IMG/VR virus record: IMGVR_UViG_3300032236_000747
Span: 186,001-250,000 of that record
Direction: 5' to 3' (one strand)
Length of the DNA: 64,000 nucleotides
Numbering within the stretch: position 1 is the first letter of the stretch; the number at the start of each line of letters is the position of its first letter. The translations under genes were made by a program, and so were the position numbers. The notes below the pieces were generated by a model, which was not told the origin of the DNA, searched no databases, and saw only the letters and a program-made list of their open reading frames with translations. Shown piece by piece: positions 3,701-55,751 of this stretch.

Positions 3701-3993
3701 GTGTAATATCCATTACTAACCCGCTAGTTGGTACACTACCCAGCGGGTCGACACTTAACTTCTATCGTAATCAATGGGCTGTACCGGGCGAAACTATTTT
3801 CTCAACAGTTTCTAACCCAGGTTCAAAGGATATATTAGACTTATCACCGTTGAAAGAACTTACAAATACTCCGCTAGGTGGAAGAGGAACATATCCAAAC
3901 GGTCCAGATACCTTGTTTATTAACGTCTATCTAACCCAAGGTAATCCGATTTTGACTAACTTAGTACTACGTTGGGGTGAAGCTCAGGCTTAA
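787..3993 (+). CDS. Large beta-rich virion structural protein (tail/baseplate-associated); paralog of 12082..14919
   Basis: 1068 aa, Thr/Gly/Ser-rich, with repeated 'T.T....H.L..G' modules. Shares DxDFEYGxQPTKW, RYQSGK, WYGAG, NTEAYMRSGN, ISHWGS and the terminal W-x-EAQA with 12082..14919. TAAATA at 756-761. Confidence 0.7.
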   Translation: MAKQLQRIYSFTPGIAGAGTIQIPGKVDLNQLLLITNATTNGFLYNFADPTYAGTTITFTRGNSTAFPQTVQNTDGYTTITLAVDTSSMLSSHNIQIFTERPEIITRPWAMGTDAFERTRVAAPQSMLDADFEYGLQPTKWQQIETMRGYPSIYEVPGTDQTILSITTDASGGGGNDIQSLITITTQFPHNLTVGGAVTVNNLQSTITAYARAQGNFIINSTPSPNTLTYYAKGKVGVNNGDRLDNVYTIVRKGLFYTGSSIGTSTFVTAGSGASTTGTITVTFAANHGLIPGETIITIINSDNGSNNHNLCQGSFYITSTPTPTTLTYNARNVGTITGTPIGGIYARPDAFFVHRPLDGGVMLGTGGPSHGYHAIRMSKKYIRYQSGKAVNYNTAALFAPNYDLRALTATNTTVGSTIYITMDDVDHGLQAGAGILVSGAITSGYNGYYAVNSVIDERNITVISTSTLGSTSAAFAAPATLQHISWHGSTIRSGTFDDQNGMYWQFDGIQMAIGQRSSTFQTAGTVNVVPDSNLVTGNSSRFDSQMAAGDRVVIKGMTHVITAISSATWMYVNPDYRGTTASGGVKMVKVTDKVVPQSQWNVDRCDGTNGPFNPSGYYLQPNRLQMIGLQWTWYGAGFIDWMLRGPDGNYMTVHRMKNSNINTEAYMRSGNQPVRYEVQNEGARSTLNTDLSTVGTVMTVTDITYFPSTGTVYIDNELINFSGKTGTTGIGQLTGLTRTGNLTYFAGGATRTFTATNIAQTHATGVGVVLISQTSSPSISHWGSAFLTDGGFDQDRGYIFNYQANNITISTKKSTAFAIRLAPSVSNAVTGDLGVRDLINRAQLLLQGLENTAGGSTQTNQAIVIEGVLNPSNFPSNPASITWYNLQGSVSGGNLLGSGQPSFTQISPGSYINFDGTATYTTTAAQTIAAGSVNIQVNSTATMQVGDAVVSPATTFVSIPGNTLISSIGNGVISITNPLVGTLPSGSTLNFYRNQWAVPGETIFSTVSNPGSKDILDLSPLKELTNTPLGGRGTYPNGPDTLFINVYLTQGNPILTNLVLRWGEAQA

Positions 3994-4007
3994 TCTTTTT
4001 TAAATAC

Positions 4008-4029
4008 AAGCCCGCAACCTGCGGGCTTT
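4008..4029 (+). terminator. Hairpin, possible intrinsic terminator
   Basis: AAGCCCGCA-acc-TGCGGGCTT, 15 nt after the 3993 stop; the T-tail is short. Confidence 0.55.
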
Positions 4030-4077
4030 CCCTTGAACATATTTAGGTAAATACAAATACTTGGATATATATTACAC

Positions 4078-12075: not shown

Positions 12076-12081
12076 AATAAA

Positions 12082-14919: not shown

Positions 14920-14932
14920 TAGGAGACCACTA

Positions 14933-17440
14933 GTGTCATCAAGAAATAGTGTTCAGCATTTTATATCAACTACTGAACCCAATAACGTACAGTTAGGTGA
15001 CGAGTGGTTAAATCCCACAACCGGTATTCTATACAAACGAACACTGGTCAATGGATCTGTTGCCTGGGCAGCTACCGGTCAAACTAACTCTAGTAATGTT
15101 ACATTGTTTAGTGGCGGTCAGTCTGGTCAAGTACTGCAGATAGTCAATAATACACCTACCTGGGTTAATACCAGTACTTTGATAGCGGTTGCTAGTAGTG
15201 GCGGCGGCGCAAGTTTAAATGCCAGCTGTTCTTTGATTATTAACGTATTTAATGCTGGTTCCGGTCCGGATAATATAGCAATAGGAGCCTATGCCCTTTG
15301 CTCAACTACTGCTGGCTGCAATATTGCACTTGGTCGTTCAGCACTGTTATCTAATACTACAGGTGTTTATAATTTTGCTGCCGGAGTCAACACTCTCGGA
15401 AGTAATACTTACGGTAATCATAATGTAGCCATTGGCGGAACAGCTCTTTACTCTAATACCAGCGGTGGATGTAATATTGCCATTGGCGTAAACACACTTT
15501 TTAAAAATACTAGCGGTTTTAATAATTTTGCTGCTGGCAGTAATGCGTTAACGTGTAATACTACAGGAAATAATAACACAGCTATTGGGTATTATGGACT
15601 GAAAAGTAACACCTATGGTATCAATAATACAGCGATCGGTTGCGGTGCACTCTGCTGCAATATTTCAGGTAATAGCAATACTGCTATTGGTTTTTATGCG
15701 TTAAGCAGAAGTAAAACATCAAATAATAACGTAGCAATCGGTTATTGTGCTTTATATTCGTTCAACGGCGGCGCAAGCTATGGAGGTTGTAATATTGCCA
15801 TAGGCACAGGTACCATGGCTTTAATAACATCTGGTTGTAATAATATTGCCATGGGCAATAATGCATTATGTTCCTCTCTTCTTAACGCCACATTTAATGT
15901 TGCTATTGGTAATAATGCAATGTCTACTACCTGTCTTTCTGACAGCAACGTAGCAATAGGACCTAGTGCTCTTAGGGGGGTTGTGGGAGTATGTAACGTT
16001 GCGTGTGATAGTGTTGCGATTGGTTCAGGTGCTTTAGGCTCTAGTGCTTGTTCTAAGTACGACGTAGCCATGGGCTATTCACCACTTAGTCAAAATACTG
16101 GTACAGGTAATGTTGCTATAGGACAGTTTGCTATGTATGCTAGTCTGTCGGCCTGCCACAGTATTGCAATCGGTAGTAATGCGTTAAGCTGTGCCTGTTG
16201 TGCTAACCTTAACATAGCACTAGGGTGCTATGCTCTAGCATGTTCATTATCGGGTACACAAAATATCGCAATCGGATCTACTGCTGCTTGCGCACTTGCT
16301 CAAGGCTACGGTAACGTGGCTATCGGATGTTGTGCTCTAGGTTTTTCAAATGTCGGATGTGATAATGTGTTCATTGGTCGAAATACTGGCCGAGGATCAA
16401 ACACTACCAGCAGCGCCGGCGTTCATAATCTGGCATTAGGTTATGGTGCATTAGTTAATAATAATGCTAATAGTTATAATATAGCCATGGGGTATCAAAG
16501 TCAGTATTGTGCTTCAAGCACATGTCAGAACATATCATTGGGTCGTTTATCAATGACGTGTGCGCTCACTGGCGCTAACAATATTGCCATTGGTTATTGT
16601 TCACTCTTTGCAAACTGCGGTCCTAATAACGTTGCCTTGGGATATGGCACAAACCCTGCCGGCGGAACTGGTAATATTTCTATAGGTAGCTATGCTAACT
16701 CTAACGTAAATGGAAACTACAATATAGCAATCGGCACATGTGCAAGCCTTGGCTGTAGCCTAGGTGCGCTATCTGGGTGTCATAATACTACTATGGGATT
16801 TAAAGCAGGATCCCTGTTGTGTTCAGCAGCCGTGCATAATCTTGCCATCGGCTGTGGCGCATTATGTAGTGCTTGTTTATCTTGTTGTAATATTGCTCTA
16901 GGTAATGGTACACTAATGTCAACTACTACCGGTAACAACAATACCGCAGTTGGTTATTGCGCAGGAACAACCAATACCTACGGAAATAATAATACATTTA
17001 TAGGTAGTGGAGCGTTTGGTGCTAGTGCTACTAGTTGTAATGCTATTACACTGGGTAATTCTAGTATTACCACAATTCGTGCTCAGGTAACTACCATTAC
17101 AGCACTATCAGATTGTCGTGATAAAACTAATATCTGCGGATTACCTATTGGACTTGATTTTATTCGTGCACTGCGTCCAGTTAAGTTTGACTGGAATATG
17201 CGAGATGGCGCCAAGGTAGGAATACCAGAAGCTGGATTTATTGCTCAAGAACTAGATGAAGTACAAACTAGATTTACAGCAACTGACTACCTAAACTTAA
17301 TCTTAAAAGAAAATACAGAACGATTAGAAGCTACTCCTGGTAAACTGTTACCAGTATTAGTAAAAGCAGTACAAGAACTAGCTCAAGAAAATGAAGATTT
17401 AAGATCTAGGATTGAAATCTTAGAAGGGAAAATAGTATAA
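14933..17440 (+). CDS. Cys-rich tail fibre with a C-terminal intramolecular chaperone (peptidase S74)
   Basis: GTG start after AGGAG. N-x-A-I-G repeats. The C-terminus has SDCRDKTNI...LRPVKFDW...GFIAQE...LVKAVQEL followed by a coiled coil. Confidence 0.85.
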   Translation: MSSRNSVQHFISTTEPNNVQLGDEWLNPTTGILYKRTLVNGSVAWAATGQTNSSNVTLFSGGQSGQVLQIVNNTPTWVNTSTLIAVASSGGGASLNASCSLIINVFNAGSGPDNIAIGAYALCSTTAGCNIALGRSALLSNTTGVYNFAAGVNTLGSNTYGNHNVAIGGTALYSNTSGGCNIAIGVNTLFKNTSGFNNFAAGSNALTCNTTGNNNTAIGYYGLKSNTYGINNTAIGCGALCCNISGNSNTAIGFYALSRSKTSNNNVAIGYCALYSFNGGASYGGCNIAIGTGTMALITSGCNNIAMGNNALCSSLLNATFNVAIGNNAMSTTCLSDSNVAIGPSALRGVVGVCNVACDSVAIGSGALGSSACSKYDVAMGYSPLSQNTGTGNVAIGQFAMYASLSACHSIAIGSNALSCACCANLNIALGCYALACSLSGTQNIAIGSTAACALAQGYGNVAIGCCALGFSNVGCDNVFIGRNTGRGSNTTSSAGVHNLALGYGALVNNNANSYNIAMGYQSQYCASSTCQNISLGRLSMTCALTGANNIAIGYCSLFANCGPNNVALGYGTNPAGGTGNISIGSYANSNVNGNYNIAIGTCASLGCSLGALSGCHNTTMGFKAGSLLCSAAVHNLAIGCGALCSACLSCCNIALGNGTLMSTTTGNNNTAVGYCAGTTNTYGNNNTFIGSGAFGASATSCNAITLGNSSITTIRAQVTTITALSDCRDKTNICGLPIGLDFIRALRPVKFDWNMRDGAKVGIPEAGFIAQELDEVQTRFTATDYLNLILKENTERLEATPGKLLPVLVKAVQELAQENEDLRSRIEILEGKIV

Positions 17441-17441
17441 C

Positions 17442-20400
17442 ATGACCATAGCTTTTAACATAGCTACTTTATTAAGTAGCACAGCTACTCAAACTATTGG
17501 TACTGCTACAAATAGTGCTGTTTCTGTAAACTTATCAGGCGGCGCCGCTGGCTCTTTACCCTACCAAAGTGCTCCTAATGCCACTGTATTTTTATCCGTA
17601 GGCACTAATGGACAGGTATTGCAGTTAGTTAGCGGAGTTCCAACTTGGGTTAACACCAGTACATTAATAGCAGCCGGCGCTGGTGGTGGCGCCAGTTTAA
17701 ACGCTTATTGTTCATTGATTATTCAAGGAGCAACTGTTGGGTCTAGCACTGGTCTAAACAACTTTGCCGTTGGATGTTGTGCTCTATTTGCCAACACCAC
17801 AGGTTGTAATAATATTGCCTTAGGTTTTAACAGTCTTAACGGAAATACTACAGGTAGTAATAATATTGGAATGGGCTACGGTTCTTTAAAAAATAGTGCC
17901 ACCGGCGTATGTAACATTGCTATCGGCATTCAAGCCATGTTCTGTAACTGTGGATATAATAATATTGCCATGGGCCAGGCCCTGGGTAGTAATGGTGTTG
18001 GTTCTATCAATGTTGCTATAGGTAATTTTGTTTTAAGCACAGCAGGTCATTCCGGGTGTTATAATATAGGTATAGGTAGCAACGCTCTTCAAAATAACGT
18101 AAGTGGTTGTAGCAATATTGCTCTTGGTTTTGCCTCTCTAATACTTAATAATGGCGGAAGCAATAACGTTGCGTTAGGACTGTGCGCCCTTTATAATAAT
18201 ACAGCAAGTAACAACATAGCCATTGGCAGCAATGCGCTAGTCTTAAATACTGCCAGCCAATTCAATACTGCAATAGGCATAGGTGCTGCTGCTGGACACT
18301 CTATTTTACTTAACTGTAGTAAAGGATGTAATACAGCAATAGGTTATTGTGCTTATAACTGCGTTGGCGGTTATGGTAATACTGCTATAGGTTTCTGTGC
18401 TATGAGTACAGGCACTGGCATAAACTATAATAATGTGGCACTGGGATACAAAGCTATGTCCTGTGTAGGTTGCTCAGCTAGCAGTTTTGGCAACGGATAC
18501 AATGTAGGCATCGGATATGGTGCAATGTCAAAGAGTGGTAACCAGGCCAACGTGGGCATTGGTTACCTTGCCTTAAATGGCGGACCAGCAGCTATTCCTG
18601 CTGATTTAGTAACAAATGCGTGTAATGTTGCCATAGGTACAACAGCAATGTCGTGTTCTACCGCAAGTATACATAATGTAGCAATAGGCGCCAGTGCATT
18701 AAAGGCAACAAAATGTGGGTGTTTTAATGTTGGTGTAGGAACCTGTGCAGGATACGGCATTGGTTCTCCGGCTTGTTTGAATACTTTTTTAGGAGCTTAT
18801 GCCGGTGGTGCTGGCTTGATTACCGGATGCTATAATGTTGGCATCGGTGCATGTTCAATGTATGCTGGTTCTTTTGCGGCAGGTTGTTTCAATATAGGTA
18901 TTGGGGCATGTACACACCGATTCGCTGTTAGTCCAGTTAATACCATAGCTATTGGTCAAACGGCCATGGGCGGCTCGTTGTGTACTACAGTTGATAATAT
19001 TGCTATTGGCTCATTTTCTATGTTTGGTTGCGGAATAAGTTCCAGCGGCGCTTGTAATATCGCAATTGGTTTGAACTCGATGTATACAAACTGTGCTGGC
19101 TATGGTAACGTAGCTATTGGTGCTAATACCATGGTCGGAGCTCCTTTTACTGGTTACACAGCATGCCTTAACGTGGCTATAGGACATTGTGCTCTAAATA
19201 CTGTTACTACTGCGATATCTAATATCGCTATTGGAGCTACTGCTCTAAAATCTAATACCAGCGGCTGTTATAATACAGCTATCGGATTGTGCGCATTGTA
19301 TAGTAACACTACTGGTCTTAGTAACGTAGCAATAGGAGTTAATACCTTACTTGGTAATACATACGGTTATAATAACTTTGCCGTTGGTCCAAACGCTCTG
19401 CGTTGTAATATCACAGGATGTAATAACATTGCTATAGGATATAGCGCCCTTTATAATAGCACTAGTGCCTTTAATATTGCTATTGGGTGTGCTGCCATGT
19501 GCTGTAACACTATCGGTACCTATAATGTTGCCATAGGAGACGGAGCAATACAATGTAACAGTACCGGTAAACAAAATGTAGCCGTTGGTGGTATAGCAAT
19601 GAACAGTAATACCAGCGGCTACGGTAATACTGCTATAGGTTATACTGCTATGGCATGTAATACTACCGGTGCAAACAACGTCGGAGTTGGGCGATATGCT
19701 TTATATGCTAATACTACCGGAAGTAATAATGTCGGATTAGGTGTCGGCGCACTATGCGGTAACATTACCGGAAATGCTAACATTGCTATTGGATATGATG
19801 CCCTTTATCAAAGTACAGGCGGTAACTGTAATATTTCGCTAGGTTCCTTCTCAATGCAGTCTAATACCAATGGTAGCTTTAATGTAGCACTTGGGTATCA
19901 ATCGTTGAGCTCTAATACCAGCGGTTGTTATAACATTATTATGGGATTTAACGCAGGGTATGCTAACACTGCTGGAAACTATAATAGTGCTATTGGATAC
20001 CAAGCTCTTAATAAAAATACCACTGGCTCTAATAATGTTGCTATAGGACCTAGTGCTCTTTATGGAAATACAACAGGTCAGCATAATATTGCTTTAGGGT
20101 TTAATACTTTAGTAACAGCGGGTTATGGATACTATAATGTAGCAATAGGATGTCAAGCACTATATCTTAATACTACTGGATGTAATAACGTTGCTATTGG
20201 TGGAATGGCAGGATGTACTAATACTACAGGCGTTAATAACGTATTCATAGGCTGTAATGCCAACGGTCTTGCTGCTACTTGCTCAAACACTATTACACTA
20301 GGTAATTCCAGTATCGCTACTATCCGTGCTCAGGTCACTACTATTACCGCGCTATCAGATTGTAGAGATAAAACAAATATTTGCGGATTACCAATTGGAC

Positions 20401-20675
20401 TTGATTTTATTCGTGCCCTACGCCCAGTTAAGTTTGACTGGAATATGCGAGATGGCGCCAAAGTAGGTATACCAGAAGCTGGATTTATTGCTCAAGATCT
20501 TGACGAAGTACAGAAGAAGTTCACAGCAACTGATTATCTAAACTTGATCATCAGCAACGAGGACGGGTCAAGATTGGAAGCAACGCCTGGTAAACTTTTA
20601 CCAGTTCTAGTACAAGCTGTTAAAGAACTAGCAGCCGAAGTAGATAGACTCCGTTTACTAGTAGAGCCACAATAA
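17442..20675 (+). CDS. Cys-rich tail fibre with a C-terminal intramolecular chaperone (peptidase S74)
   Basis: Same repeat type as 14933..17440, and an S74 domain nearly identical to it at the protein level. Confidence 0.85.
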   Translation: MTIAFNIATLLSSTATQTIGTATNSAVSVNLSGGAAGSLPYQSAPNATVFLSVGTNGQVLQLVSGVPTWVNTSTLIAAGAGGGASLNAYCSLIIQGATVGSSTGLNNFAVGCCALFANTTGCNNIALGFNSLNGNTTGSNNIGMGYGSLKNSATGVCNIAIGIQAMFCNCGYNNIAMGQALGSNGVGSINVAIGNFVLSTAGHSGCYNIGIGSNALQNNVSGCSNIALGFASLILNNGGSNNVALGLCALYNNTASNNIAIGSNALVLNTASQFNTAIGIGAAAGHSILLNCSKGCNTAIGYCAYNCVGGYGNTAIGFCAMSTGTGINYNNVALGYKAMSCVGCSASSFGNGYNVGIGYGAMSKSGNQANVGIGYLALNGGPAAIPADLVTNACNVAIGTTAMSCSTASIHNVAIGASALKATKCGCFNVGVGTCAGYGIGSPACLNTFLGAYAGGAGLITGCYNVGIGACSMYAGSFAAGCFNIGIGACTHRFAVSPVNTIAIGQTAMGGSLCTTVDNIAIGSFSMFGCGISSSGACNIAIGLNSMYTNCAGYGNVAIGANTMVGAPFTGYTACLNVAIGHCALNTVTTAISNIAIGATALKSNTSGCYNTAIGLCALYSNTTGLSNVAIGVNTLLGNTYGYNNFAVGPNALRCNITGCNNIAIGYSALYNSTSAFNIAIGCAAMCCNTIGTYNVAIGDGAIQCNSTGKQNVAVGGIAMNSNTSGYGNTAIGYTAMACNTTGANNVGVGRYALYANTTGSNNVGLGVGALCGNITGNANIAIGYDALYQSTGGNCNISLGSFSMQSNTNGSFNVALGYQSLSSNTSGCYNIIMGFNAGYANTAGNYNSAIGYQALNKNTTGSNNVAIGPSALYGNTTGQHNIALGFNTLVTAGYGYYNVAIGCQALYLNTTGCNNVAIGGMAGCTNTTGVNNVFIGCNANGLAATCSNTITLGNSSIATIRAQVTTITALSDCRDKTNICGLPIGLDFIRALRPVKFDWNMRDGAKVGIPEAGFIAQDLDEVQKKFTATDYLNLIISNEDGSRLEATPGKLLPVLVQAVKELAAEVDRLRLLVEPQ

Positions 20676-20739: not shown

Positions 20740-21675
20740 ATGGCTAAAACAATAATCTATATCGACGGCGGCGCCGGTCGTGTTATCGCAGCAATACCTG
20801 CACTACTCAAATTCCACAGATTAAACCCGAACTTAGATTGGGCAATCGTTATCCCTGCTTGGGATTATCTGCTTTGGAGCATTCCAGAACTTCAAGATCG
20901 CGTCTATGGCGCAGATACGAAAGGTATTTGGGACAATGTAATCAAAGACGCAGATGAAATAATGACTCCAGAGCCCTACAGACTACCTGCTTATTTCCGT
21001 CAAGAAATCAGCTTAGTTGAAGGATTTGATCGTGAGATCAATGGTACCAAAGATCACAGCGATCTAGGTGTTCCAAAAATGATTTTCAACAAAACTGAAG
21101 AGAAATGGGCAGTAAACACCATTGCTGATGTCAAGCAACAACAGCAAAAAGCTAAGACTATTGTCATTCAACCATTTGGACGCGGCGCTACATTAGATCG
21201 CAATGACGTCATTGACAGCGCAAGTCGCAGTTTGAGTGCTGATGCGTATATCAGTTTAACTAAAAAACTTGCCGCAAGATATAACATGATCTTCTTTGGC
21301 GAACAACAACTCCAAATCACCACAGATAGTTACACAGTTAAACTACCTCCGCAGACTGATCTGCGTATGTGGGCATCATTGATTAGCTATGCTGATTACT
21401 TTGTTGGTGTTGATAGTGTGGGACAACACATGGCTCGTGCTACAGGTTGTCCAGGAACAGTTATTTTTGGATCAACATTCCCAGTTAACACAAGTTATCC
21501 TGATTATTTCCAGATCATTGAAAGAGCAGGACAAAAGAAATATAGTCCGATTCGTATCACTGGATTAGACAGTGTGTTAGCGGATCGTTACAATGATACA
21601 ATGATGGACTTTGAAGAAAGTGAAATTACTTCAATCTACAATCAAATTGTAGCGGACATTGAGAAAACAAAATAA
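20740..21675 (+). CDS. GT-B glycosyltransferase, GT9 (heptosyltransferase)-like
   Basis: N-terminal DGGAGRVIAAIPAL, middle IVIQPFG, and ADYFVGVDSVGQHMARATGCPGTVIFGST, which matches the GT9 'DSg.mHlA.a.g.p.v.lfG.t' signature. Confidence 0.75.
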   Translation: MAKTIIYIDGGAGRVIAAIPALLKFHRLNPNLDWAIVIPAWDYLLWSIPELQDRVYGADTKGIWDNVIKDADEIMTPEPYRLPAYFRQEISLVEGFDREINGTKDHSDLGVPKMIFNKTEEKWAVNTIADVKQQQQKAKTIVIQPFGRGATLDRNDVIDSASRSLSADAYISLTKKLAARYNMIFFGEQQLQITTDSYTVKLPPQTDLRMWASLISYADYFVGVDSVGQHMARATGCPGTVIFGSTFPVNTSYPDYFQIIERAGQKKYSPIRITGLDSVLADRYNDTMMDFEESEITSIYNQIVADIEKTK

Positions 21676-23357
21676 TGTATAACATACTAGCAATAAACCC
21701 CGGACACAATGGTTCTGCTGCGCTAATATCAGACGGCAACGTTGTGTTCTATGCTGAAGAAGAGCGCCTAAGTCGCATGAAATATGACGGTAATCCATTT
21801 CGTGCTATGCTTACAGTACTAGAAGAAACACACGTAGACGAACTAGTCATTGGCGGTACCAGTCCAGACCTAGTCAAACTTCCGTGGACCTACGAAGATG
21901 CCTATACAGCATTGGTTCGTAAGTTTAATCCTAGTGTAAAAGTTACGAACTTGGGTCATCAACACCACCTGGGACATGCTGCCGCCGCATTTTACAACAG
22001 TGGATTTACTACAGCAGTAGCAGTTATTGCTGACGGTGCTGGCAGTGTGCATCAAGCTAAAATGGGGGAAGATGATAATGCTCCAATGACTTCTGGATTT
22101 GAAACAGAAAGCATTTATAAATGTGCATATCCTGTGACTTTTGATACTGTCTATAAGCGTTACGCAGACGGCAACGCTAGATATTTTGACAATGGTGTAC
22201 AAGAGTTTGATAACTCTGTTACTATTACCAAAGCCTACGAAGCAGTTAGTAACTATCTAGGATTTGGTTTTATTGAAGCAGGTAAGACCATGGGGCTCGC
22301 ACCTTATGGAAAATATGATCCAAATATTCCTAACTTTTTTGTAGAAGGCAAAGGTAACAAAAACTTATTAGAACCTATGTATCCAGCGGGGGCACTAATA
22401 GATGAGAACAGATTTGCTTACCTTCGCAGAACACAAGACCCTAAAGTTTGGCATCATGATTTTAGTAAAGTGCGCGACATAGATAAAAATCTAGCATGGC
22501 ACATACAGCAAGAATCACAAGAGCAAATCGGCGATCTCATAGAACTAGCAGTTCAAAAGACAGGTGAAAAGAATGTAGTTATCGCTGGCGGATATGGTTT
22601 AAACTGTGTTGCTAACTATTACTACCTCAAACGTTTCCCCGATCTAAATATCTATGTAGATCCAGTTAGTCACGATGGCGGAACTGCCCTAGGCCTAGCA
22701 TTGTTAGCTTGGCACCTATACAGTAATAGTAGTGTTCCTAATCCTCTTACTTCTTTGTATCTAGGTATTGATCCTGATTTAACTGAAATCAATACAGCTG
22801 AATTTAAGGTGCAGGACGTTACCGCAGACGACATAGCAGAACTATTAGTAAATCAAAATATTGTTGCTATGTTTAATGGTCGTGCAGAAGCAGGTCCTAG
22901 AGCATTAGGTAATCGTAGTATCATGTTTGATCCACGTAGACCAGACGGCAAAGACTTTGTCAACAAGGTTAAAGGTCGTGAATGGTTCCGCCCATTTGCT
23001 GGATCGGTATTAGAAGAACACGCAGACAAATGGTTCGAGATGCGAGGGCTAAAATCTAGTCCGTTTATGATGTATGCTATCAATGTGTTGCCTGAAAAAC
23101 TCGGAGAGATTCCTGCGGTTACACACGTAGACGGTACATGCCGTGTTCAGACAGTTAGTAAAACTGACAACGAAGCATATTACAACTTAATCAATGCGTT
23201 TTATAAAAAGACAGGTGTACCGATGGTGTTCAATACTAGTTTTAATCTAGCAGGCGATCCTCTAGTAGAAACAGTTGACGACGCTATTGACACACTTCGC
23301 CGCTCGGATATAAAATATCTATATCTACCTGCGTTAAACAAACTAATATCAAAATAA
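21675..23357 (+). CDS. O-carbamoyltransferase, NodU/CmcH/TobZ family
   Basis: GHNGSAAL, EEERLSR.K, HHLGHAA, DGAG, GKTMGLAPYG, GGYGLNCVAN, GRAEAGPRALGNRS, KGREWFRPFA, HVDGTCRVQTV and NTSFN motifs. Confidence 0.95.
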   Translation: MYNILAINPGHNGSAALISDGNVVFYAEEERLSRMKYDGNPFRAMLTVLEETHVDELVIGGTSPDLVKLPWTYEDAYTALVRKFNPSVKVTNLGHQHHLGHAAAAFYNSGFTTAVAVIADGAGSVHQAKMGEDDNAPMTSGFETESIYKCAYPVTFDTVYKRYADGNARYFDNGVQEFDNSVTITKAYEAVSNYLGFGFIEAGKTMGLAPYGKYDPNIPNFFVEGKGNKNLLEPMYPAGALIDENRFAYLRRTQDPKVWHHDFSKVRDIDKNLAWHIQQESQEQIGDLIELAVQKTGEKNVVIAGGYGLNCVANYYYLKRFPDLNIYVDPVSHDGGTALGLALLAWHLYSNSSVPNPLTSLYLGIDPDLTEINTAEFKVQDVTADDIAELLVNQNIVAMFNGRAEAGPRALGNRSIMFDPRRPDGKDFVNKVKGREWFRPFAGSVLEEHADKWFEMRGLKSSPFMMYAINVLPEKLGEIPAVTHVDGTCRVQTVSKTDNEAYYNLINAFYKKTGVPMVFNTSFNLAGDPLVETVDDAIDTLRRSDIKYLYLPALNKLISK

Positions 23358-24176
23358 ATGCAACAACAATACTATTTTATATCAGGATTGCCGAGAAGTG
23401 GATCGACATTATTAACATCTATTTTAAAGCAAAATCCAAAGTTCACTGCGCAAATCAGTGATCCGTTACATGATTATGCTAGAAATATTTTAACAACAAC
23501 TCATGCGAGTGTAGGTATGGAAGCAGCAGTACCTATTCCTAAGAGACAACATCTTATTAAAGGTTTGTTTAACTCGTTTTATGAAGATGGCAACGAAGTT
23601 TGTTTTAATACAAACAGGGCCTGGACTGCTAATACTACTTTATTAAAAGACCTCTTTCCTTATACAAAGATTATTATTTGTATTAGGGATATTCCTTGGA
23701 TTTTAGATAGCTTCGAACAACTAAATGCTAAAAATCCGTATACCATTAAAGCATTGTATCACCACCAAGACCTTGGCACAGTTTATCATAGATGCGCTTC
23801 TTTAATGGATCCTAATAATGGTTATGTAGCAGGACCAATGACTTGTTTAAAACAAGCGTTGTTCAGTAATGAAAAAGAAATGTTGTGTATTGTTGACTAT
23901 GATGCCCTGGCTAAAAATCCAGAAGAGACAATGCGTAAAGTTTACAGCTTTATTAATCAACCATATTACAATCACGATTTTAACAATGTAGAAGATAGCT
24001 ATGATGAGTTTGACGAACAAACAAACATCAAGGGATTGCATACAGTACGCAAACAGGTGGAATACCGCCAAAGAAAACCAATCATACCTTCAGACCTGTG
24101 GCAACAAAATGTTGCTCAAAGTTTTTGGAAGTTTGATTTTGATCATATAAAGAGACAAATGTTATGGATAGAATAA
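23358..24176 (+). CDS. PAPS-dependent sulfotransferase
   Basis: 5'-PSB loop SGLPRSGSTLL, 3'-PB motif IRD...ILDS, and YDALAKNPEETMRKVYSFI. Confidence 0.9.
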   Translation: MQQQYYFISGLPRSGSTLLTSILKQNPKFTAQISDPLHDYARNILTTTHASVGMEAAVPIPKRQHLIKGLFNSFYEDGNEVCFNTNRAWTANTTLLKDLFPYTKIIICIRDIPWILDSFEQLNAKNPYTIKALYHHQDLGTVYHRCASLMDPNNGYVAGPMTCLKQALFSNEKEMLCIVDYDALAKNPEETMRKVYSFINQPYYNHDFNNVEDSYDEFDEQTNIKGLHTVRKQVEYRQRKPIIPSDLWQQNVAQSFWKFDFDHIKRQMLWIE

Positions 24177-24970
24177 GTAGAAAATTTAATAAACAACTGC
24201 AGGAACCACCTGCACCACAACAACAAGCACCCCAGCAACAACCACGCAGAGTACTAGTTGGTACTCCTTGTTATGATGGAAGGATTGAAGTTTGGTATGC
24301 AAATAGCCTTATACAAACTATTAGAGCAGGTCTGCAACTAGGTGTTGAAATTTTACCTATATGGTTAAGCTACGATGCTCTTATCCAACGAGCACGCAAC
24401 GACTTAATGGGTATTATGCATGAAACCGGGTTTGATGATATTGTTTTTATCGACAGCGATATAGAGTGGGCTCCCGAAGACTTCTTTAAACTACTAAATT
24501 ATCCAGTTGATGTAGTAGGCGGAACTTATCCCAAGAAAGGGGATATGGAACAATATGTGGCAAAAATTCTAGACCCTCAACGACAAAGAGATCCTAACAC
24601 AGGTTTATTACAAGTAGACGGTTTAGGCACTGGATTTTTACGTATGAGCAAGCGTGCTGTAGACTATCTATGGGATGTAAGCACACCATATGAAGAAAAA
24701 GACCAAGGAAAGGTCCGTCGTTGGATCTTTGATGTAGAGATTCAAAACGGGGAAATCTTTAGCGAAGATATACTAGTATGTCAAAAACTAAACAACGCAG
24801 GACTCAACGTATGGTTAGATCCTACTATTACTTGTGCTCACATCGGAACAAAAAGATATCAAGGAAACTTCGAAGCATGGTTTGGCAAATTACAAACAGG
24901 ACAACCTGCAGTTCCGTCAGGGTATGGCTTAACAGGAACTCCACCTGATATTAAATCACTTTACGAATAA
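24164..24970 (+). CDS. GT-A fold glycosyltransferase-like protein
   Basis: VLVGTPCY, LIQRARN, FIDSDI (DxD), GTGFLRM, SEDILVC and CAHIG motifs. Confidence 0.75.
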   Translation: MDRISRKFNKQLQEPPAPQQQAPQQQPRRVLVGTPCYDGRIEVWYANSLIQTIRAGLQLGVEILPIWLSYDALIQRARNDLMGIMHETGFDDIVFIDSDIEWAPEDFFKLLNYPVDVVGGTYPKKGDMEQYVAKILDPQRQRDPNTGLLQVDGLGTGFLRMSKRAVDYLWDVSTPYEEKDQGKVRRWIFDVEIQNGEIFSEDILVCQKLNNAGLNVWLDPTITCAHIGTKRYQGNFEAWFGKLQTGQPAVPSGYGLTGTPPDIKSLYE

Positions 24971-24972
24971 CT

Positions 24973-25620
24973 ATGGCAAGATTTAGTGTAGATAAAAACA
25001 TGGCCACTAACGCACCAGTGGCTCAACCAACGCTAGGGGTATACACTCCTTTACAAATGCCTGCTACATTTGACAAATATACCATTGCATTAGATAGAGA
25101 TGGTGTGCTAGTTGAATGTGCCGATGCTATTACAGGCCCGGAAACATTTAAACCTATTGACGGATCTTTTAGAGCAGTAGCTTTAATAAGAAGCAAAGGT
25201 CACAAAATTGTTGTGTTATTTGATCAACCAGGCGTAATACAACGAAAAGTTACAGTTGAACAAGTTGAAGATTGTAATCGTCATATGTTAAATCTATTAG
25301 GTCAAGCAGGTTGTACAAGTATCGACGGAATTTGGTATAATACAAGTAGTCGCAAAGACGACGCATATGCCAAACCTAACACAGGTTTATTTAAACATGC
25401 TGAAGCAAACAGTCCAGGTGTAAAACTTTCTGGAGGCGTGTATGTCGGTGATACCATTGACGATCTAGTAATGGCAGATAAAGCAGGGGCAACTCCTGTA
25501 TTAGTCCTTACTGGCAAAGGAAAAAAGACAGCAGAAATGTTAAAGAAGCCTATCTATCGTATGTTAGAACCCAAAGTTAAGATATTTGATAATCTATTAC
25601 AATACGCGGAGAGCCTATGA
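24973..25620 (+). CDS. GmhB-like HAD phosphatase (heptose-bisphosphate/histidinol-phosphate phosphatase family)
   Basis: LDRDGVL, DQPGV, KPNTG, VGDTIDDL and VLTGKG motifs. Confidence 0.85.
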   Translation: MARFSVDKNMATNAPVAQPTLGVYTPLQMPATFDKYTIALDRDGVLVECADAITGPETFKPIDGSFRAVALIRSKGHKIVVLFDQPGVIQRKVTVEQVEDCNRHMLNLLGQAGCTSIDGIWYNTSSRKDDAYAKPNTGLFKHAEANSPGVKLSGGVYVGDTIDDLVMADKAGATPVLVLTGKGKKTAEMLKKPIYRMLEPKVKIFDNLLQYAESL

Positions 25621-26531
25621 AACCGTTAGGCGGCAGTGAGTTAATGTATTACACAGTTGACAAACTGTTAAAACCGGGTTGGCAAGACAAAGTTAATCTC
25701 ATACTAAGTTTTTGCGATCATCAATATATCGATTCTACCAAGAAAAATGTAGTATGGCAACAACTTAATACAAATGAAGAAACTGTTGCTGCCATGTCTG
25801 ATCCTACGTTTATTGAAAAAGTAGACGCATTTGTTTGGGTCAGTTATTGGCAATATGAAAAGTTTAGAAAAGAGTTTAATGTTCCTGCATATAAAAGCAT
25901 AGTTATACGAAATGCTACTCAACCATGCCAGTGGATACCTAGAGAACGGGGAAAGTTTAAACTAGTGTACTCTTCAACTCCGTGGAGAGGTCTTGATATT
26001 TTAATCAAGGCTATTAGAATATTAAATAGACCCGACATCGAACTTGATGTATTTTCAAGTACAAAAATATATGGCCCTGCTTTTGAAAAACAAACGGAAG
26101 GCCAGTTTGATTGGTTGTGGGAAGAATGTAGGAAAACTCCTGGAGTAAACTATCATGGATATCAGCCCAACGATGTAGTCCGTGAAACAGTTAAAAAGGC
26201 ACATATAATGGCCTATCCTAACACCTTCGAAGAAACAAGCTGTATAGCTGCTATAGAAGCGTTAACGGCGGGTTGTAAGATGCTTACTACCGGTTACGGT
26301 GCACTACCAGAGACATGTGCTGGTTGGGCAGATTATGTACCCTATGGTCCTAATAGAGACGTTCTAGCCGAACGGTTTGCGTATGCTCTTAACAACACAC
26401 TCAACGAATATTGGACAAACAGTACACAAGAGCTGTTAAAAAGACAAAATGAATACTACAATGGATTTTATTCATGGAATACTCGTATGCCTGAATGGCA
26501 AAGTTTAATAGATAAGTTATCAAAGGGCTAA
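25617..26531 (+). CDS. GT-B glycosyltransferase, GT4-like
   Basis: N-terminal GGSE, YSSTPWRGLDIL, and the E-x7-E motif within FEETSCIAAIEA, followed by GALPET. Confidence 0.85.
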   Translation: MKPLGGSELMYYTVDKLLKPGWQDKVNLILSFCDHQYIDSTKKNVVWQQLNTNEETVAAMSDPTFIEKVDAFVWVSYWQYEKFRKEFNVPAYKSIVIRNATQPCQWIPRERGKFKLVYSSTPWRGLDILIKAIRILNRPDIELDVFSSTKIYGPAFEKQTEGQFDWLWEECRKTPGVNYHGYQPNDVVRETVKKAHIMAYPNTFEETSCIAAIEALTAGCKMLTTGYGALPETCAGWADYVPYGPNRDVLAERFAYALNNTLNEYWTNSTQELLKRQNEYYNGFYSWNTRMPEWQSLIDKLSKG

Positions 26532-26532
26532 A

Positions 26533-26898
26533 ATGACTAAAAAATTTGATTGGAAGAAAGAGACTGTACAGATGTTAGGTCGCTGGCAACCATGGCATGC
26601 TGGACATAGAAAGTTATTTGACCGTGCTATTTCTAAAACTGGCCAAGTATGTATTATGATTCGTGATTGTGAAGGATGGAATGATAGCAATCCTTTTAAA
26701 AAAGAAGAAGTAGAAAACTTTATTCATGCAGATTTAAAGGAAACTTACGAAGGACAGTACTGCATTTTATTTGTACCTAACATTACAAATATCACTTATG
26801 GCCGTAATGTTGGTTATAAAATTGAAAACGAAGTTTTTGACGAAGACACACATGCAATCTCGGCAACAGAAATTAGAAAATCGATGGGACTCAAATGA
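26533..26898 (+). CDS. Small HxGH nucleotidyltransferase (cytidylyltransferase-like fold)
   Basis: GRWQPWHAGH and a C-terminal ISATEIR motif; 121 aa. Confidence 0.8.
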   Translation: MTKKFDWKKETVQMLGRWQPWHAGHRKLFDRAISKTGQVCIMIRDCEGWNDSNPFKKEEVENFIHADLKETYEGQYCILFVPNITNITYGRNVGYKIENEVFDEDTHAISATEIRKSMGLK

Positions 26899-27515
26899 CC
26901 AAAAAGATATTAGTAATGGGACTTCCAGGCGCAGGCAAGACTACATTTACGCAAGAACTTGTTAAAAAACTAATGCTAACACATACTGTTAGTTGGTTTA
27001 ACGCAGACAGTGTACGTGAACAGTTTAACGATTGGGATTTTAGTCCAGAAGGTCGAAAAAGACAAGTAGAGCGTATGAGTAAAATGGCCAATGATGCTAC
27101 TGCTGATTATGCTATCTGCGATTTTGTATGCCCTACAGATGAACTAAGGTCTATATTCAACGCCGATGTTGTTATATGGTTAGATACTATCAAGGAAGGT
27201 AGATTTGAAGATACTAACAAGGCATTTGTTGCTCCTACAAAATATGATTTTAGGATCACTGATTGGAGCGATACATGGGTTAAAAGTGTAGCAGCAAGTT
27301 TAACTAAACCTGCAAGCGAAAGTCATTTACGCAGCATTGCTAAGGCTGTGAGCTGGAGAACACTAGGTACTGTTGATACTTTTATATTAAGTTTTATTAT
27401 CACAGGTCAGGCAAAACTTGCTCTAGCGATTAGCGGAGTTGAAATCTTTACCAAAATATTCTTATTTTGGGGACACGAACGCATTTGGCATAAGGTCAAA
27501 TGGGGAAAACAATAA
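26895..27515 (+). CDS. Adenylyl-sulfate (APS) kinase-like protein fused to a DUF2061-like membrane domain
   Basis: P-loop GLPGAGKTT, then NADSVR, DFSPEGR.RQ and FVCPT. The C-terminus RSIAKAVSWRTLGTVDT...HERIW is typical of DUF2061. Confidence 0.75.
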   Translation: MTKKILVMGLPGAGKTTFTQELVKKLMLTHTVSWFNADSVREQFNDWDFSPEGRKRQVERMSKMANDATADYAICDFVCPTDELRSIFNADVVIWLDTIKEGRFEDTNKAFVAPTKYDFRITDWSDTWVKSVAASLTKPASESHLRSIAKAVSWRTLGTVDTFILSFIITGQAKLALAISGVEIFTKIFLFWGHERIWHKVKWGKQ

Positions 27516-27538
27516 ATACTAGCATAAAGGAGTCAAAT

Positions 27539-27841
27539 ATGACACAAATTACATTAAACACACCAGTAGAAGTATCGCCAGCGGTTGCTGCTGTAACTTC
27601 AAATCAAGTTACCGTACTAGAAGTTAGAGAAAACTTTGGTTGGGACTATGATCCAGCTCAACCAGGCGGATTCTTCGGACCAGGTCGTCCTCAATCAGTT
27701 GAAGTTACTGTTTTGCTAGACAAAGAACGTAATATTCAACGTACCTTGGTAGCATGGGAAGGCGAAGCTTATGTAGCAGTTCGCGGAACATGGACTGACG
27801 CAGATCTAGCTGCTCGTATTGCTACTATTCTCGGTGCTTAA
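27539..27841 (+). CDS. Hypothetical late protein (100 aa)
   Basis: TAAATA at 27513 and AAGGAG RBS before the ATG at 27539, which is a better start than 27500. Confidence 0.7.
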   Translation: MTQITLNTPVEVSPAVAAVTSNQVTVLEVRENFGWDYDPAQPGGFFGPGRPQSVEVTVLLDKERNIQRTLVAWEGEAYVAVRGTWTDADLAARIATILGA

Positions 27842-28260
27842 ATTAAGTCTAATAATAACTCGATCTTAGTTTTTATAGATCGGTTATTTAGGCTAGTTTT
27901 CACGCCCTGGTGCAATGGTCTAGGCCATGCGTTTAAATCGCACCATGCATATCCCGAATGCTCTTCATTGAGCGTCGGGATAAACTCTTTTTCGACTATC
28001 AAAATATAGGTATTGTATTGAAACTGTTGATCGTTGCTAGTGAATAGTTCCAAGGGAACTACTTTTTTTATAGCAGGCGTCTTACCTACTTCTTCTTCTA
28101 TTTCTCTTTTTAGTGCGTCATACGGCGTATGATCTTCGGGTTCTTTTTTCCCGCCAACAAGACCCCAGGTTCCTGCTGTTTTACCTTGAGTTCTTAACAG
28201 GAATAAAAATCTTTTTGTATCTTTTGTTAGAAATAAACCGCCACTACAAACTATCTGCAT
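27838..28260 (-). CDS. NUDIX hydrolase
   Basis: Nudix box WGLVGGKKE...ALKREIEEEVG. Confidence 0.9.
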   Translation of the reverse strand: MQIVCSGGLFLTKDTKRFLFLLRTQGKTAGTWGLVGGKKEPEDHTPYDALKREIEEEVGKTPAIKKVVPLELFTSNDQQFQYNTYILIVEKEFIPTLNEEHSGYAWCDLNAWPRPLHQGVKTSLNNRSIKTKIELLLDLI

Positions 28261-55732: not shown

Positions 55733-55751
55733 GAGTTAAAATAAATACATA

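What the first reader, a model, noticed from the sequence alone, without database searches (positions are those of the whole stretch)
26533..27515. Possible minimal two-gene PAPS synthase: a 121-aa HxGH enzyme coupled to APS kinase
Seen: a tiny nucleotidyltransferase (GRWQPWHAGH, ISATEIR) overlaps the APS-kinase-like gene by ATGA, in an operon that also encodes a sulfotransferase. Established: Sat-type ATP sulfurylases belong to the same HxxH superfamily and carry a similar S-x-T-x-x-R motif, but are around 400 aa. Inference: this is a stripped-down ATP sulfurylase. The alternative is an HldC/RfaE-like sugar-1-phosphate nucleotidyltransferase working with the GmhB-like and GT9-like genes.
Basis: partly seen in the sequence, partly recalled or inferred. 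Interest (0 to 1): 0.6.

Follow-up and report, generated by a model that had tools for sequence, protein, structure and literature searches.

The report
Minimal phage sulfate-activating enzyme pair
A giant freshwater phage carries a tiny 121-residue nucleotidyltransferase locked to a shortened APS kinase; the same pair sits beside sulfotransferase or APS reductase genes in ocean bacteria (SAR11, SAR86) that lack every known ATP sulfurylase, so it is probably an unrecognised enzyme for activating sulfate, not yet tested at the bench.

Summary
A 121-aa HxGH nucleotidyltransferase (26533-26898) overlaps by ATGA a 206-aa protein (26895-27515) made of an APS-kinase-family domain plus DUF2061. Both lie in a glycan-modifying operon that holds the phage's only sulfotransferase.

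- **Fusions.** 48 of the 150 best cluster representatives of the small enzyme are fused to this same kinase.
- **SAR86.** The pair lies in a sulfotransferase-kinase-NTase operon. 46 sampled genomes have sulfotransferases and the small enzyme, but no Sat or CysD.
- **SAR11.** The small enzyme co-occurs almost perfectly with APS reductase AprA (81 both, 17 neither, 3 discordant). It abuts aprBA in about 20 genomes. CysD was found only in genomes without it.

Sulfotransferases use PAPS and AprBA makes or uses APS, so the two routes meet at the same metabolite.

By descent it is not a trimmed Sat. Its nearest relatives in sequence and fold are NadM-type NMN adenylyltransferases, and it has lost about 30 residues of their acceptor site. 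The phage also has a true NadM-Nudix enzyme and an RfaE-like enzyme elsewhere, which weakens both rival readings.

There is no biochemical proof, and some phages carry the small enzyme without a kinase or sulfotransferase. Confidence is about 0.65.

The parts
26533..26898 (+). 121-aa HxGH nucleotidyltransferase, proposed minimal sulfate adenylyltransferase (ATP + sulfate <-> APS + PPi). Motifs GRWQPWHAGH (16-25), R44, PNITN (82-86), YGRNVGY (89-95), ISATEIR (109-115).
   Evidence: ORF and motifs. Family alignment A1, 74 sequences: invariant G16 Q19 H25 G90 R91 G94. AlphaFold model pLDDT 92.3. Nearest structures are NadM/NMNAT, Z 9.6, with ATP sulfurylase 1V47 at Z 8.3. Fusions and contexts.
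26895..27311 (+). APS-kinase-family P-loop kinase domain with a shortened lid (residues 1 to about 139 of the 206-aa protein). Proposed reaction: APS + ATP -> PAPS.
   Evidence: Pfam APS_kinase 32.9 bits. Family profile A2 against PDB: APS kinases at E 7e-23 to 1e-15, next best shikimate kinase at 2e-6. R41, F49 and R54 align with the Arg/Phe/Arg of PAPSS1 'DNIR...GFS..DR'. Model pLDDT 96.6; Foldseek top hits are APS kinases, TMq 0.74-0.85.
27336..27491 (+). DUF2061 two-helix hairpin fused to the kinase C-terminus. Role unknown (membrane tether or oligomerisation is a guess).
   Evidence: PF09834 67 bits, residues 148-199. In relatives the same domain is fused N-terminally to the NTase (193-aa proteins) or stands alone as 69 aa next to it. 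It is the only DUF2061 in the phage.
23358..24176 (+). Sulfotransferase, the presumed PAPS consumer. N-terminal GLPRSGST motif.
   Evidence: PF13469 57 bits and PF00685 35.8 bits. It is the only PF13469 match in the 354,680-bp phage record.
20740..21675 (+). GT9-like glycosyltransferase, first gene of the cassette.
   Evidence: PF01075 29 bits; heptosyltransferase models far below their cut-offs.
21675..23357 (+). NodU/CmcH-type O-carbamoyltransferase.
   Evidence: Carbam_trans_C 206.9 bits and Carbam_trans_N 75.4 bits. A homologue lies directly upstream of the pair in other phage loci.
24164..24970 (+). Glycosyltransferase-like protein (phrog_1574).
24973..25620 (+). HAD-IIIA phosphatase, GmhB-like, specificity unknown.
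   Evidence: TIGR01662 66.3 bits (over cut-off). GmhB equivalog 87.6 bits against a cut-off of 178. PNK3P 22 bits.
25617..26531 (+). GT4-type glycosyltransferase.
   Evidence: Glycos_transf_1 42.5 bits.
27500..27841 (+). 113-aa protein of unknown function that overlaps the end of the kinase gene; last gene of the cassette.
   Evidence: No Pfam, NCBIfam or PHROG hit. A 49%-identical homologue lies next to the pair in L035.

Best explanation
The two overlapping genes are a self-contained PAPS-synthesis module of a jumbo phage.

- **NTase (inferred).** The 121-aa HxGH nucleotidyltransferase binds MgATP with GRWQPWHAGH and ISATEIR and transfers the adenylyl group to sulfate, giving APS and PPi.
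- **Kinase (inferred from family membership).** The adjacent lid-less APS-kinase-family enzyme phosphorylates the 3'-OH of APS to PAPS, pulling the unfavourable first step.
- **Use of PAPS (inferred).** PAPS is consumed by the operon's only sulfotransferase, which sulfates a glycan built and carbamoylated by the neighbouring glycosyltransferases and the NodU-like enzyme. This parallels NodPQ-NodH-NodU.
- **DUF2061.** The hairpin moves between the two enzymes in relatives. It probably tethers or assembles them, but its role is unknown.

What is shown: the gene overlap, the motifs, kinase family membership, fusion of the two modules, and the genomic associations. The same NTase-kinase pair is a near-core gene pair of SAR11 and common in SAR86 and SAR116. 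There it would be the missing sulfate adenylyltransferase: APS + PPi -> ATP + sulfate after AprBA, and PAPS supply for sulfotransferases.
For: 1. **Coupling.** ATGA overlap. 48 of 150 family representatives are kinase-NTase fusions, in both orders. PHROG 10255 is such a fusion.
2. **The partner is an APS kinase by family.** Profile hits to APS kinases at E 7e-23, with the next kinase family at 2e-6. The residues aligned with the Arg/Phe/Arg of the APS kinases' 'DNIR...GFS..DR' motifs are conserved. Fold matches have TMq up to 0.85.
3. **Sulfotransferase linkage.** Same operon in the window, which holds the phage's only PF13469. Adjacent in L017 and within 10 kb in 13 of 56 phage loci. Divergent neighbour in SAR116. 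A SulfoT-Kin-NTase operon in at least 20 SAR86 genomes, e.g. L152.
4. **Pathway hole.** In 101 SAR86-order genomes, NTase against sulfotransferase gives 47/2/8/44 (p 9e-18). Sat was found in 1 and CysD in 2, so 46 genomes have sulfotransferases with no known ATP sulfurylase. In the complete SAR86 genome G003, the pair's kinase is the only APS-kinase hit, and there is no Sat, CysD, AprA or PAPS reductase.
5. **Independent link to APS in SAR11.** NTase against AprA gives 81/1/2/17 (p 4e-16). The pair abuts aprMBA in about 20 genomes (L154). CysD was found in 0 of 82 NTase-positive and 5 of 19 NTase-negative genomes. SAR11 is reported to lack sat and cysDN while keeping aprAB, a 'cysC' and cysQ (PMC5069961, PMC12636525).
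6. **Rival roles are already filled in this phage.** It has a bona fide NadM-Nudix NMNAT (402.9 bits, cut-off 397) and an RfaE-domain-II-like NTase.
7. **Acceptor site.** The family lacks about 30 residues of the NMNAT acceptor-binding region. It has extra conserved Arg44 and Arg91, as expected for a small anionic acceptor (the reading of these residues is inference).
8. **Fold.** ATP sulfurylase is among the top fold matches (1V47, Z 8.3, 113 residues aligned).
Against: - No significant sequence similarity to Sat. PF01747 gives 11.5 bits, E 0.026. hhalign against one Sat catalytic domain gives probability 0.9%. There are no ATP sulfurylases in the profile-against-PDB search at E <= 10.
- The nearest relatives are NMN adenylyltransferases.
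- Some phages carry the NTase (+DUF2061) without the kinase, in DNA-replication or 7-deazaguanine neighbourhoods (L008, L060).
- Five phage records, including two estimated 92-100% complete and Xylella phage Sano, have no PF13469 sulfotransferase.
- A recurrent carbamoyltransferase and radical-SAM neighbourhood is unexplained.
- The co-occurrence counts are phylogenetically clumped, so they represent few independent events.
- Sat and the NTase coexist in 4 sampled genomes.
- There is no biochemical evidence, and no test of a physical complex (one search gave no verdict).
Confidence: 0.65

Rival explanations
1. The pair adenylylates and then 3'-phosphorylates some other small acceptor (adenylyl-X -> 3'-phospho-adenylyl-X). 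This could be a CoaD/CoaE-like or unknown nucleotide cofactor pathway. The sulfur contexts would then be indirect.
For: - HxGH enzymes use many acceptors.
- The NTase occurs without a sulfotransferase in several phages and beside nucleotide-metabolism, carbamoyltransferase and radical-SAM genes.
- PPAT is among the top fold hits (Z 9.5).
- Enoyl-CoA hydratase and CoA-binding genes flank the pair in one SAR11 locus.
Against: - The kinase is specifically APS-kinase family and keeps the residues aligned with the Arg/Phe/Arg of the APS kinases' conserved motifs.
- Two unrelated APS/PAPS-handling enzymes, sulfotransferase and AprBA, are the recurrent neighbours in different lineages.
- The pathway hole in SAR86 would stay open.
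Confidence: 0.17
2. It is a truncated NMN adenylyltransferase working with a kinase (NadR-like NR kinase or an NAD kinase analogue) in phage NAD salvage, perhaps together with the neighbouring Nudix gene.
For: - The best sequence and fold relatives are NadM/archaeal NMNAT, and it shares their GRxQPxHxGH motif.
- A NUDIX gene lies 320 bp downstream on the other strand.
- In Xylella phage Bacata the fused form follows a gene annotated COG3236 / GTP cyclohydrolase II.
Against: - All NMNAT models score far below their cut-offs (26-30 bits against 127-181) and match only the N-terminal two thirds.
- About 30 residues of the acceptor region are missing.
- The phage already encodes a full NadM-Nudix enzyme.
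- The kinase is APS-kinase family, not RNK or NAD kinase.
- The NUDIX gene is a conserved neighbour of the sheath-stabiliser gene in PA5oct-like phages.
- This reading does not explain the sulfotransferase and AprBA linkage.
Confidence: 0.07
3. It is an HldC/RfaE-like sugar-1-phosphate nucleotidyltransferase that supplies an activated heptose or other sugar to the GT9-like and other glycosyltransferases. The GmhB-like phosphatase and the P-loop kinase would replace HldA.
For: - GT9-like and GmhB-like genes lie in the same operon.
- HldE is a kinase-NTase fusion with a small NTase domain (established knowledge).
- HldC is a fold match at Z 6.2.
Against: - No hit to RfaE domain II at E <= 0.01.
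- A better RfaE-like paralogue exists elsewhere in the phage.
- The GT9 and GmhB matches are weak, and these genes are absent from almost all other loci that carry the pair.
- The kinase family is APS kinase, not pfkB.
Confidence: 0.04
4. The enzyme handles APS but mainly in the breakdown direction or with phosphate: APS + PPi -> ATP, or APS + Pi -> ADP (ADP-sulfurylase-like). In the phage it would then scavenge APS rather than make it.
For: In SAR11 the pair is tied to AprBA, which is thought to oxidise sulfite to APS (PMC12636525).
Against: - It is the same chemistry as the main explanation, so this is a variant of it.
- In the phage and in SAR86 there is no APS source other than the pair, yet a sulfotransferase is present.
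Confidence: 0.07

Closest known systems
Sat/CysC and bifunctional PAPS synthases (PAPSS1/2; Sat-CysC fusions such as Aquifex 2GKS); NodPQ as a dedicated PAPS supply for NodH
   Same: - Two-step logic: an HxxH-superfamily adenylyltransferase plus an APS kinase.
- Fused in both orders in different lineages.
- Placed next to sulfotransferases, or next to aprBA where sat usually sits (the usual position of sat is from memory).
- C-terminal I-S-x-T-x-x-R motif.
- Shared fold, Z 5.5-8.3.
   Different: - The adenylyltransferase is 121 aa, against about 350-400 aa.
- It has no PUA-like domain and no significant sequence match to PF01747.
- The kinase lacks about 18-30 lid residues.
- A DUF2061 hairpin is attached.
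NadM / archaeal NMN adenylyltransferase (1F9A, 1EJ2, 2QJT)
   Same: The closest relatives by profile (E 6e-11) and by fold (Z 9.5-9.6). They share GRxQPxHxGH, the NPF loop and the S-x-T-x-x-R motif.
   Different: - Only the N-terminal two thirds align.
- About 30-45 residues of the acceptor-binding part are missing.
- It scores far below the family cut-offs.
- It has a different genomic partner and context.
- The phage has a genuine NadM-Nudix enzyme as well.
Other NTase + kinase pairs or fusions: NadR (NMNAT + RNK), HldE (kinase + adenylyltransferase), CoaD/CoaE (COASY)
   Same: The architecture is a small HxGH NTase coupled or fused to a kinase acting in the same pathway. CoaD/CoaE likewise makes an adenylylated product that is then 3'-phosphorylated.
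   Different: The kinase here belongs to the APS-kinase family, not to RNK, pfkB or CoaE. The contexts point to APS/PAPS.
Phage 'cysC' auxiliary metabolic genes (PMC10914622; bioRxiv 10.1101/655167)
   Same: Freshwater phages with large genomes carry and transcribe genes annotated cysC. Homologues of the window's kinase are labelled adenylylsulfate kinase by JGI.
   Different: The passages I read in those papers treat cysC as a lone step of host sulfate assimilation and do not mention a partner. Here the kinase comes with its own candidate sulfurylase and a sulfotransferase, and the phage has no cysH.

Membership tests
Sat-type ATP sulfurylase (Pfam PF01747) | Sequence match to the ATP-sulfurylase catalytic domain above the curated cut-off | tested here: not met
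   11.5 bits, E 0.026, against a cut-off of 24.3. hhalign against a Sat catalytic domain gives probability 0.9%. No Sat in the profile-against-PDB search at E <= 10.
Sat-type ATP sulfurylase (Pfam PF01747) | N-terminal PUA-like domain and a total size of about 350-400 aa | tested here: not met
   The protein is 121 aa with a single domain.
Sat-type ATP sulfurylase (Pfam PF01747) | HxxH motif after strand 1 and a C-terminal I-S-x-T-x-x-R motif in a Rossmann-like nucleotidyltransferase fold | tested here: met
   H22-A-G-H25 and I109-S-A-T-E-I-R115. The fold aligns with T. thermophilus ATP sulfurylase 1V47 at Z 8.3 over 113 residues. ISATEIR aligns with ISGSDVR of a SAR86 Sat.
Sat-type ATP sulfurylase (Pfam PF01747) | Catalyses ATP + sulfate <-> APS + PPi | not testable with these tools
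   Only indirect support: pathway holes and neighbourhoods.
NadM / archaeal NMN adenylyltransferase (TIGR01527, NF002243) | Score above the curated cut-off over the full-length model | tested here: not met
   29.7 bits against 127, and 26.3 against 181.2. The match covers residues 14-84 only. The profile matches PDB NMNATs only over positions 6-81.
NadM / archaeal NMN adenylyltransferase (TIGR01527, NF002243) | GRxQPxHxGH ATP-binding motif | tested here: met
   GRWQPWHAGH aligns with GRFQPFHKGH of 2QJT and 1F9A.
HldC / RfaE domain II (TIGR02199) | Sequence match to the heptose-1-phosphate adenylyltransferase model | tested here: not met
   No hit at E <= 0.01. A different phage gene (L013:1438-1902) scores 69.6 bits.
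Cytidylyltransferase-like superfamily (Pfam PF01467) | Match above the gathering threshold | tested here: met
   21.3 bits against a cut-off of 21, residues 16-49 only. This is marginal.
APS kinase (Pfam PF01583 / CysC), for the partner protein | Match above the Pfam gathering threshold; P-loop; residues aligned with the Arg/Phe/Arg of the 'DNIR...GFS..DR' motifs | tested here: met
   32.9 bits against 21.1. The family profile hits APS kinases at E 7e-23. G9, G14 and K15 are conserved, and R41, F49 and R54 align with the R, F and R of PAPSS1. Fold TMq 0.74-0.85.
APS kinase (Pfam PF01583 / CysC), for the partner protein | Full-length equivalog (TIGR00455), including the mobile lid | tested here: not met
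   24.4 bits against a cut-off of 138.7. About 18-30 lid residues are absent in the alignments with PAPSS1.
APS kinase (Pfam PF01583 / CysC), for the partner protein | Phosphorylates the 3'-OH of APS | not testable with these tools
   Inference from family membership and context.

The most novel reading that the evidence does not exclude
The 121-aa protein represents a third, unrecognised family of sulfate adenylyltransferase. It would be a minimal NMNAT-like HxGH enzyme that works with a lid-less APS kinase.

- It would be a near-core function of SAR11 (82 of 101 sampled species) and common in SAR86 and SAR116.
- It would close the long-noted gap after AprBA in SAR11.
- It would be the only PAPS source for SAR86 sulfotransferases.
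- Phage 'cysC' genes would then be half of a complete, portable PAPS synthase rather than a lone assimilation step.
Probability: 0.55. Interest if true: 0.9.

Novelty: new variant of a known kind. Interest (0 to 1): 0.8.

Why it matters
**Enzymology.** If true, sulfate activation can be done by a 120-residue enzyme unrelated in sequence to Sat and CysDN.

**SAR11.** The reading would complete the 'incomplete' sulfur pathway of the ocean's most abundant bacterium. SAR11 keeps aprAB under strong purifying selection but has no sat (PMC5069961, PMC12636525).

**SAR86.** It would explain how streamlined SAR86 cells supply their sulfotransferases with PAPS.

**Phages.** Widespread, transcribed phage 'cysC' genes (PMC10914622) would be part of a self-sufficient sulfation module. 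This would be useful in hosts that cannot activate sulfate.

**Annotation.** Pipelines that now call these proteins NMN or phosphopantetheine adenylyltransferases would need correcting.

**Testing.** The hypothesis is directly testable with two small soluble proteins.

Tried and rejected
- **Complex prediction** of NTase + kinase domain: no verdict (score 0.00). This is not evidence either way.
- **hhalign** of the family profile against one Sat catalytic domain: only the C-terminal motif aligns, with no significance.
- **The search for related loci** with the 74-sequence alignment failed for lack of a conserved stretch. It was repeated with a 12-sequence alignment.
- **PF13469 in five phage records** that carry the NTase: none found. 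Phage-encoded sulfotransferase is therefore not universal.
- **PAPS reductase (PF01507)** in the phage and in SAR86: none found. Assimilatory use is unlikely there.
- **'GRD' motif.** I considered YGRDVGY as a Sat-like GRDHAG signature. I dropped it as evidence because the phage's own NadM enzyme aligns a G-R at the same place.
- **Literature.** Searches for DUF2061; SAR11 + adenylylsulfate kinase; Pelagibacter + cysC/PAPS; SAR86 + sulfotransferase; ATP sulfurylase + non-orthologous; and SAR11 + aprA/sulfite/ATP sulfurylase found no description of this enzyme.
Full report
**What is there.** The window is bases 186001-250000 of a 354,680-bp virus record that CheckV rates complete. Its neck and tail genes are nearest those of jumbo myoviruses such as Atu_ph07, Phosso and PA5oct. 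On the + strand, ten tightly packed or overlapping genes run from 20740 to 27841:
- a GT9-like protein;
- a NodU/CmcH-type carbamoyltransferase;
- a Sulfotransfer_3 protein;
- a GT-like protein;
- a GmhB-like HAD-IIIA phosphatase;
- a GT4;
- the 121-aa HxGH protein (26533-26898);
- a 206-aa protein (26895-27515) with an APS-kinase-like N-terminal domain and a C-terminal DUF2061;
- a 113-aa unknown.

The cassette lies directly after five giant tail-fibre/spike-like genes (787-20675) and before the sheath-stabiliser, neck and sheath genes.

**What the two proteins are by family.** The small protein barely reaches Pfam CTP_transf_like (21.3 bits). Its best named hits are NadM/archaeal NMN adenylyltransferases, all far below their cut-offs.

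A profile of 74 diverse homologues (A1) hits NMNAT structures at E 6e-11, but only over positions 6-81. It hits PPAT weakly and no ATP sulfurylase at E <= 10. The AlphaFold model is confident (pLDDT 92.3). VIA-align gives NadM Z 9.6, M. jannaschii NMNAT 9.5, PPAT 9.5, NadR 8.5 and T. thermophilus ATP sulfurylase 8.3. Foldseek agrees. The fold therefore places it in the HxGH superfamily without deciding the acceptor.

Relative to NMNATs, about 30 residues between 'PNITN' and 'GY' are missing. From memory, that stretch carries the nicotinamide-stacking tryptophan. The family also has its own nearly invariant R44, N83, G90-R91 and G94.

The partner is much clearer. A profile of 42 kinase domains (A2) hits APS kinases at E 7e-23 to 1e-15, with the next family, shikimate kinase, at 2e-6. 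The P-loop is kept, and R41, F49 and R54 align with the Arg, Phe and Arg of PAPSS1 'DNIR...GFS..DR'. Some 18-30 lid residues are absent. Its model (pLDDT 96.6) matches APS kinases at TMq 0.74-0.85.

**The two modules belong together.**
- An exhaustive search found 1,157 50%-identity cluster representatives of the small enzyme.
- Of the best 150, 46 are kinase-NTase fusions and 2 are NTase-kinase fusions.
- PHROG 10255 ('kinase') is such a fusion, present in Xylella phages Sano and Salvo and Stenotrophomonas phage DLP6.
- In about 40 of 52 phage loci and in nearly all of 80 cellular loci the two genes are adjacent.
- DUF2061 moves around them. It is C-terminal to the kinase here, N-terminal to the NTase in abundant 193-aa proteins, and free-standing in a T4-like phage.

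**Which acceptor? Evidence from cellular genomes.** The family is not phage-specific. A scan of species-representative genomes returned more than 570 hits, dominated by SAR11 (Pelagibacter) and also including SAR86, SAR116 and Bacteroidota. These are 52-58% identical to the phage protein.

*SAR86.*
- In a sample of 101 SAR86-order genomes, 49 have the NTase and 55 have strong PF13469 sulfotransferases.
- The overlap is 47 both, 2 NTase only, 8 sulfotransferase only and 44 neither.
- In at least 20 of these genomes a sulfotransferase of about 370 aa lies immediately upstream on the same strand, giving SulfoT-Kin-NTase. L152 is an example.
- Sat was found in 1 and CysD in 2 of the 101. So 46 genomes have sulfotransferases and the pair but no known ATP sulfurylase.
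- In the complete SAR86 genome G003 the pair's kinase is the only APS-kinase-family hit. There is no Sat, CysD, AprA or PAPS reductase, yet two strong sulfotransferases are present. There the pair follows a PF03601 (YeiH-like) transporter gene.

*SAR116.* A fused Kin-NTase is the divergent neighbour of a TPR-sulfotransferase.

*SAR11.*
- 82 of 101 sampled genomes have the NTase and 83 have AprA. The table is 81 both, 1 NTase only, 2 AprA only and 17 neither.
- In about 20 genomes the pair abuts the aprMBA operon tail to tail (L154).
- CysD occurs in 5 genomes, all NTase-negative. Sat occurs in 4, three of them NTase-positive.
- Published work states that SAR11 keeps aprAB, a 'cysC' and cysQ but lacks sat and cysDNHIJ. 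It also states that aprAB is under very strong purifying selection, presumably to remove sulfite (PMC5069961, PMC12636525).

Sulfotransferases (PAPS) and AprBA (APS) are unrelated enzymes that share only their nucleotide. Their independent linkage to the pair in different lineages is the main argument that the NTase makes or uses APS.

**Caveats on the statistics.** The presence patterns are clumped by lineage (the handles alternate in blocks), so the Fisher p-values overstate independence. The adjacency data and the repetition across SAR86, SAR116, SAR11 and phages are the sturdier evidence.

**Back to the phage.** The record has no Sat, no PAPS reductase, one DUF2061 and exactly one PF13469 sulfotransferase, the one in this operon. 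It also encodes a bona fide NadM-Nudix NMNAT (402.9 bits, cut-off 397) and an RfaE-domain-II-like NTase elsewhere. The two rival roles for the 121-aa protein are therefore already covered.

The simplest reading is a NodPQ/NodH/NodU-like logic. The pair supplies PAPS to the sulfotransferase, which decorates a glycan made by the cassette's glycosyltransferases. The target (host envelope, or the adjacent giant fibre proteins) is unknown.

**What does not fit.**
- Several phages have the NTase (+DUF2061) without the kinase, next to DNA polymerase, helicase or FolE/QueD genes.
- Five phage records with the NTase, including Sano, lack PF13469. Only 13 of 56 phage loci show a sulfotransferase within 10 kb.
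- A carbamoyltransferase with radical-SAM genes is a recurrent neighbour.

These cases may use host APS kinases, APS reductases or other sulfotransferase families. They could equally mean that the acceptor is broader than sulfate.

**Novelty.** I found no paper that describes this enzyme or the pairing. The passages I read on phage 'cysC' treat it as a lone assimilation gene and name no partner (PMC10914622; 10.1101/655167). Source annotations call the NTase an NMN or phosphopantetheine adenylyltransferase.

I rate it a new variant of a known kind: sulfate activation by a new, minimal enzyme family. Confidence in the function is 0.65.

Noticed in passing
window 787-20675: Five consecutive giant ORFs (1068, 2665, 945, 835 and 1077 aa) match virion structural, tail-spike and tail-fibre PHROGs with many internal repeats. 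The sulfation/glycosylation cassette starts 65 bp after the last one. The virion fibres themselves could therefore be the modified target.
   Followed up: partly
window 24973-25620: The GmhB-like HAD-IIIA phosphatase also gives a weak hit to polynucleotide-kinase 3'-phosphatase (PF08645, 22 bits). It could be a PAP 3'-phosphatase (a CysQ analogue) that removes the sulfotransferase by-product, rather than a heptose phosphatase. This is speculation.
   Followed up: no
G000:C1 about 337122-338141 (L012:1474-2493) and about 55407-55871 (L013:1438-1902), outside the window: The phage encodes a full-length NadM-Nudix NMN adenylyltransferase (NAD salvage) and a separate RfaE-domain-II-like nucleotidyltransferase. 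A third CTP_transf_like domain lies in a protein of more than 950 aa (L014).
   Followed up: partly
L004-L007, L022-L032, L062 (phage contigs): A NodU-type carbamoyltransferase lies directly upstream of the NTase/kinase/DUF2061 genes. It is often accompanied by several radical-SAM genes and nucleotide-metabolism genes (thymidylate-synthase-like, dCMP deaminase, DHFR). This association is unexplained.
   Followed up: no
L154 (SAR11 genome G129, contig 23, 3611-7985) and about 20 further SAR11 genomes: The Kin-NTase pair abuts the aprA-aprB-(264 aa) operon tail to tail. NTase and AprA presence agree in 98 of 101 sampled Pelagibacterales genomes.
   Followed up: yes
L151:451-2604 (SAR86-order genome G006): The single canonical Sat found in the SAR86 sample is an unusual 717-aa fusion: pyruvate-kinase barrel + PUA_2 + ATP-sulfurylase.
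   Followed up: no
window 27838-28260 (- strand): A NUDIX hydrolase gene sits next to the tail-sheath-stabiliser gene. PA5oct-like Pseudomonas jumbo phages annotate the same neighbourhood, so it probably belongs to the structural block and not to the cassette.
   Followed up: partly
L063 (Xylella phage Bacata) 29138-30314; L001 (Sano) 5145-6318: In Sano-like siphophages the fused kinase-NTase follows a small gene annotated in Bacata as 'COG3236 / GTP cyclohydrolase II', with a MazG-like gene and a gene annotated cysteine dioxygenase a few kb upstream. No sulfotransferase was found in Sano.
   Followed up: partly
window 27336-27491 and relatives (P0006, P0057; L008:7802-8011): DUF2061, listed by Pfam as a predicted membrane protein, behaves as a mobile module. 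It is fused to either enzyme or free-standing but always adjacent, and it stays with the NTase even where the kinase is absent.
   Followed up: partly
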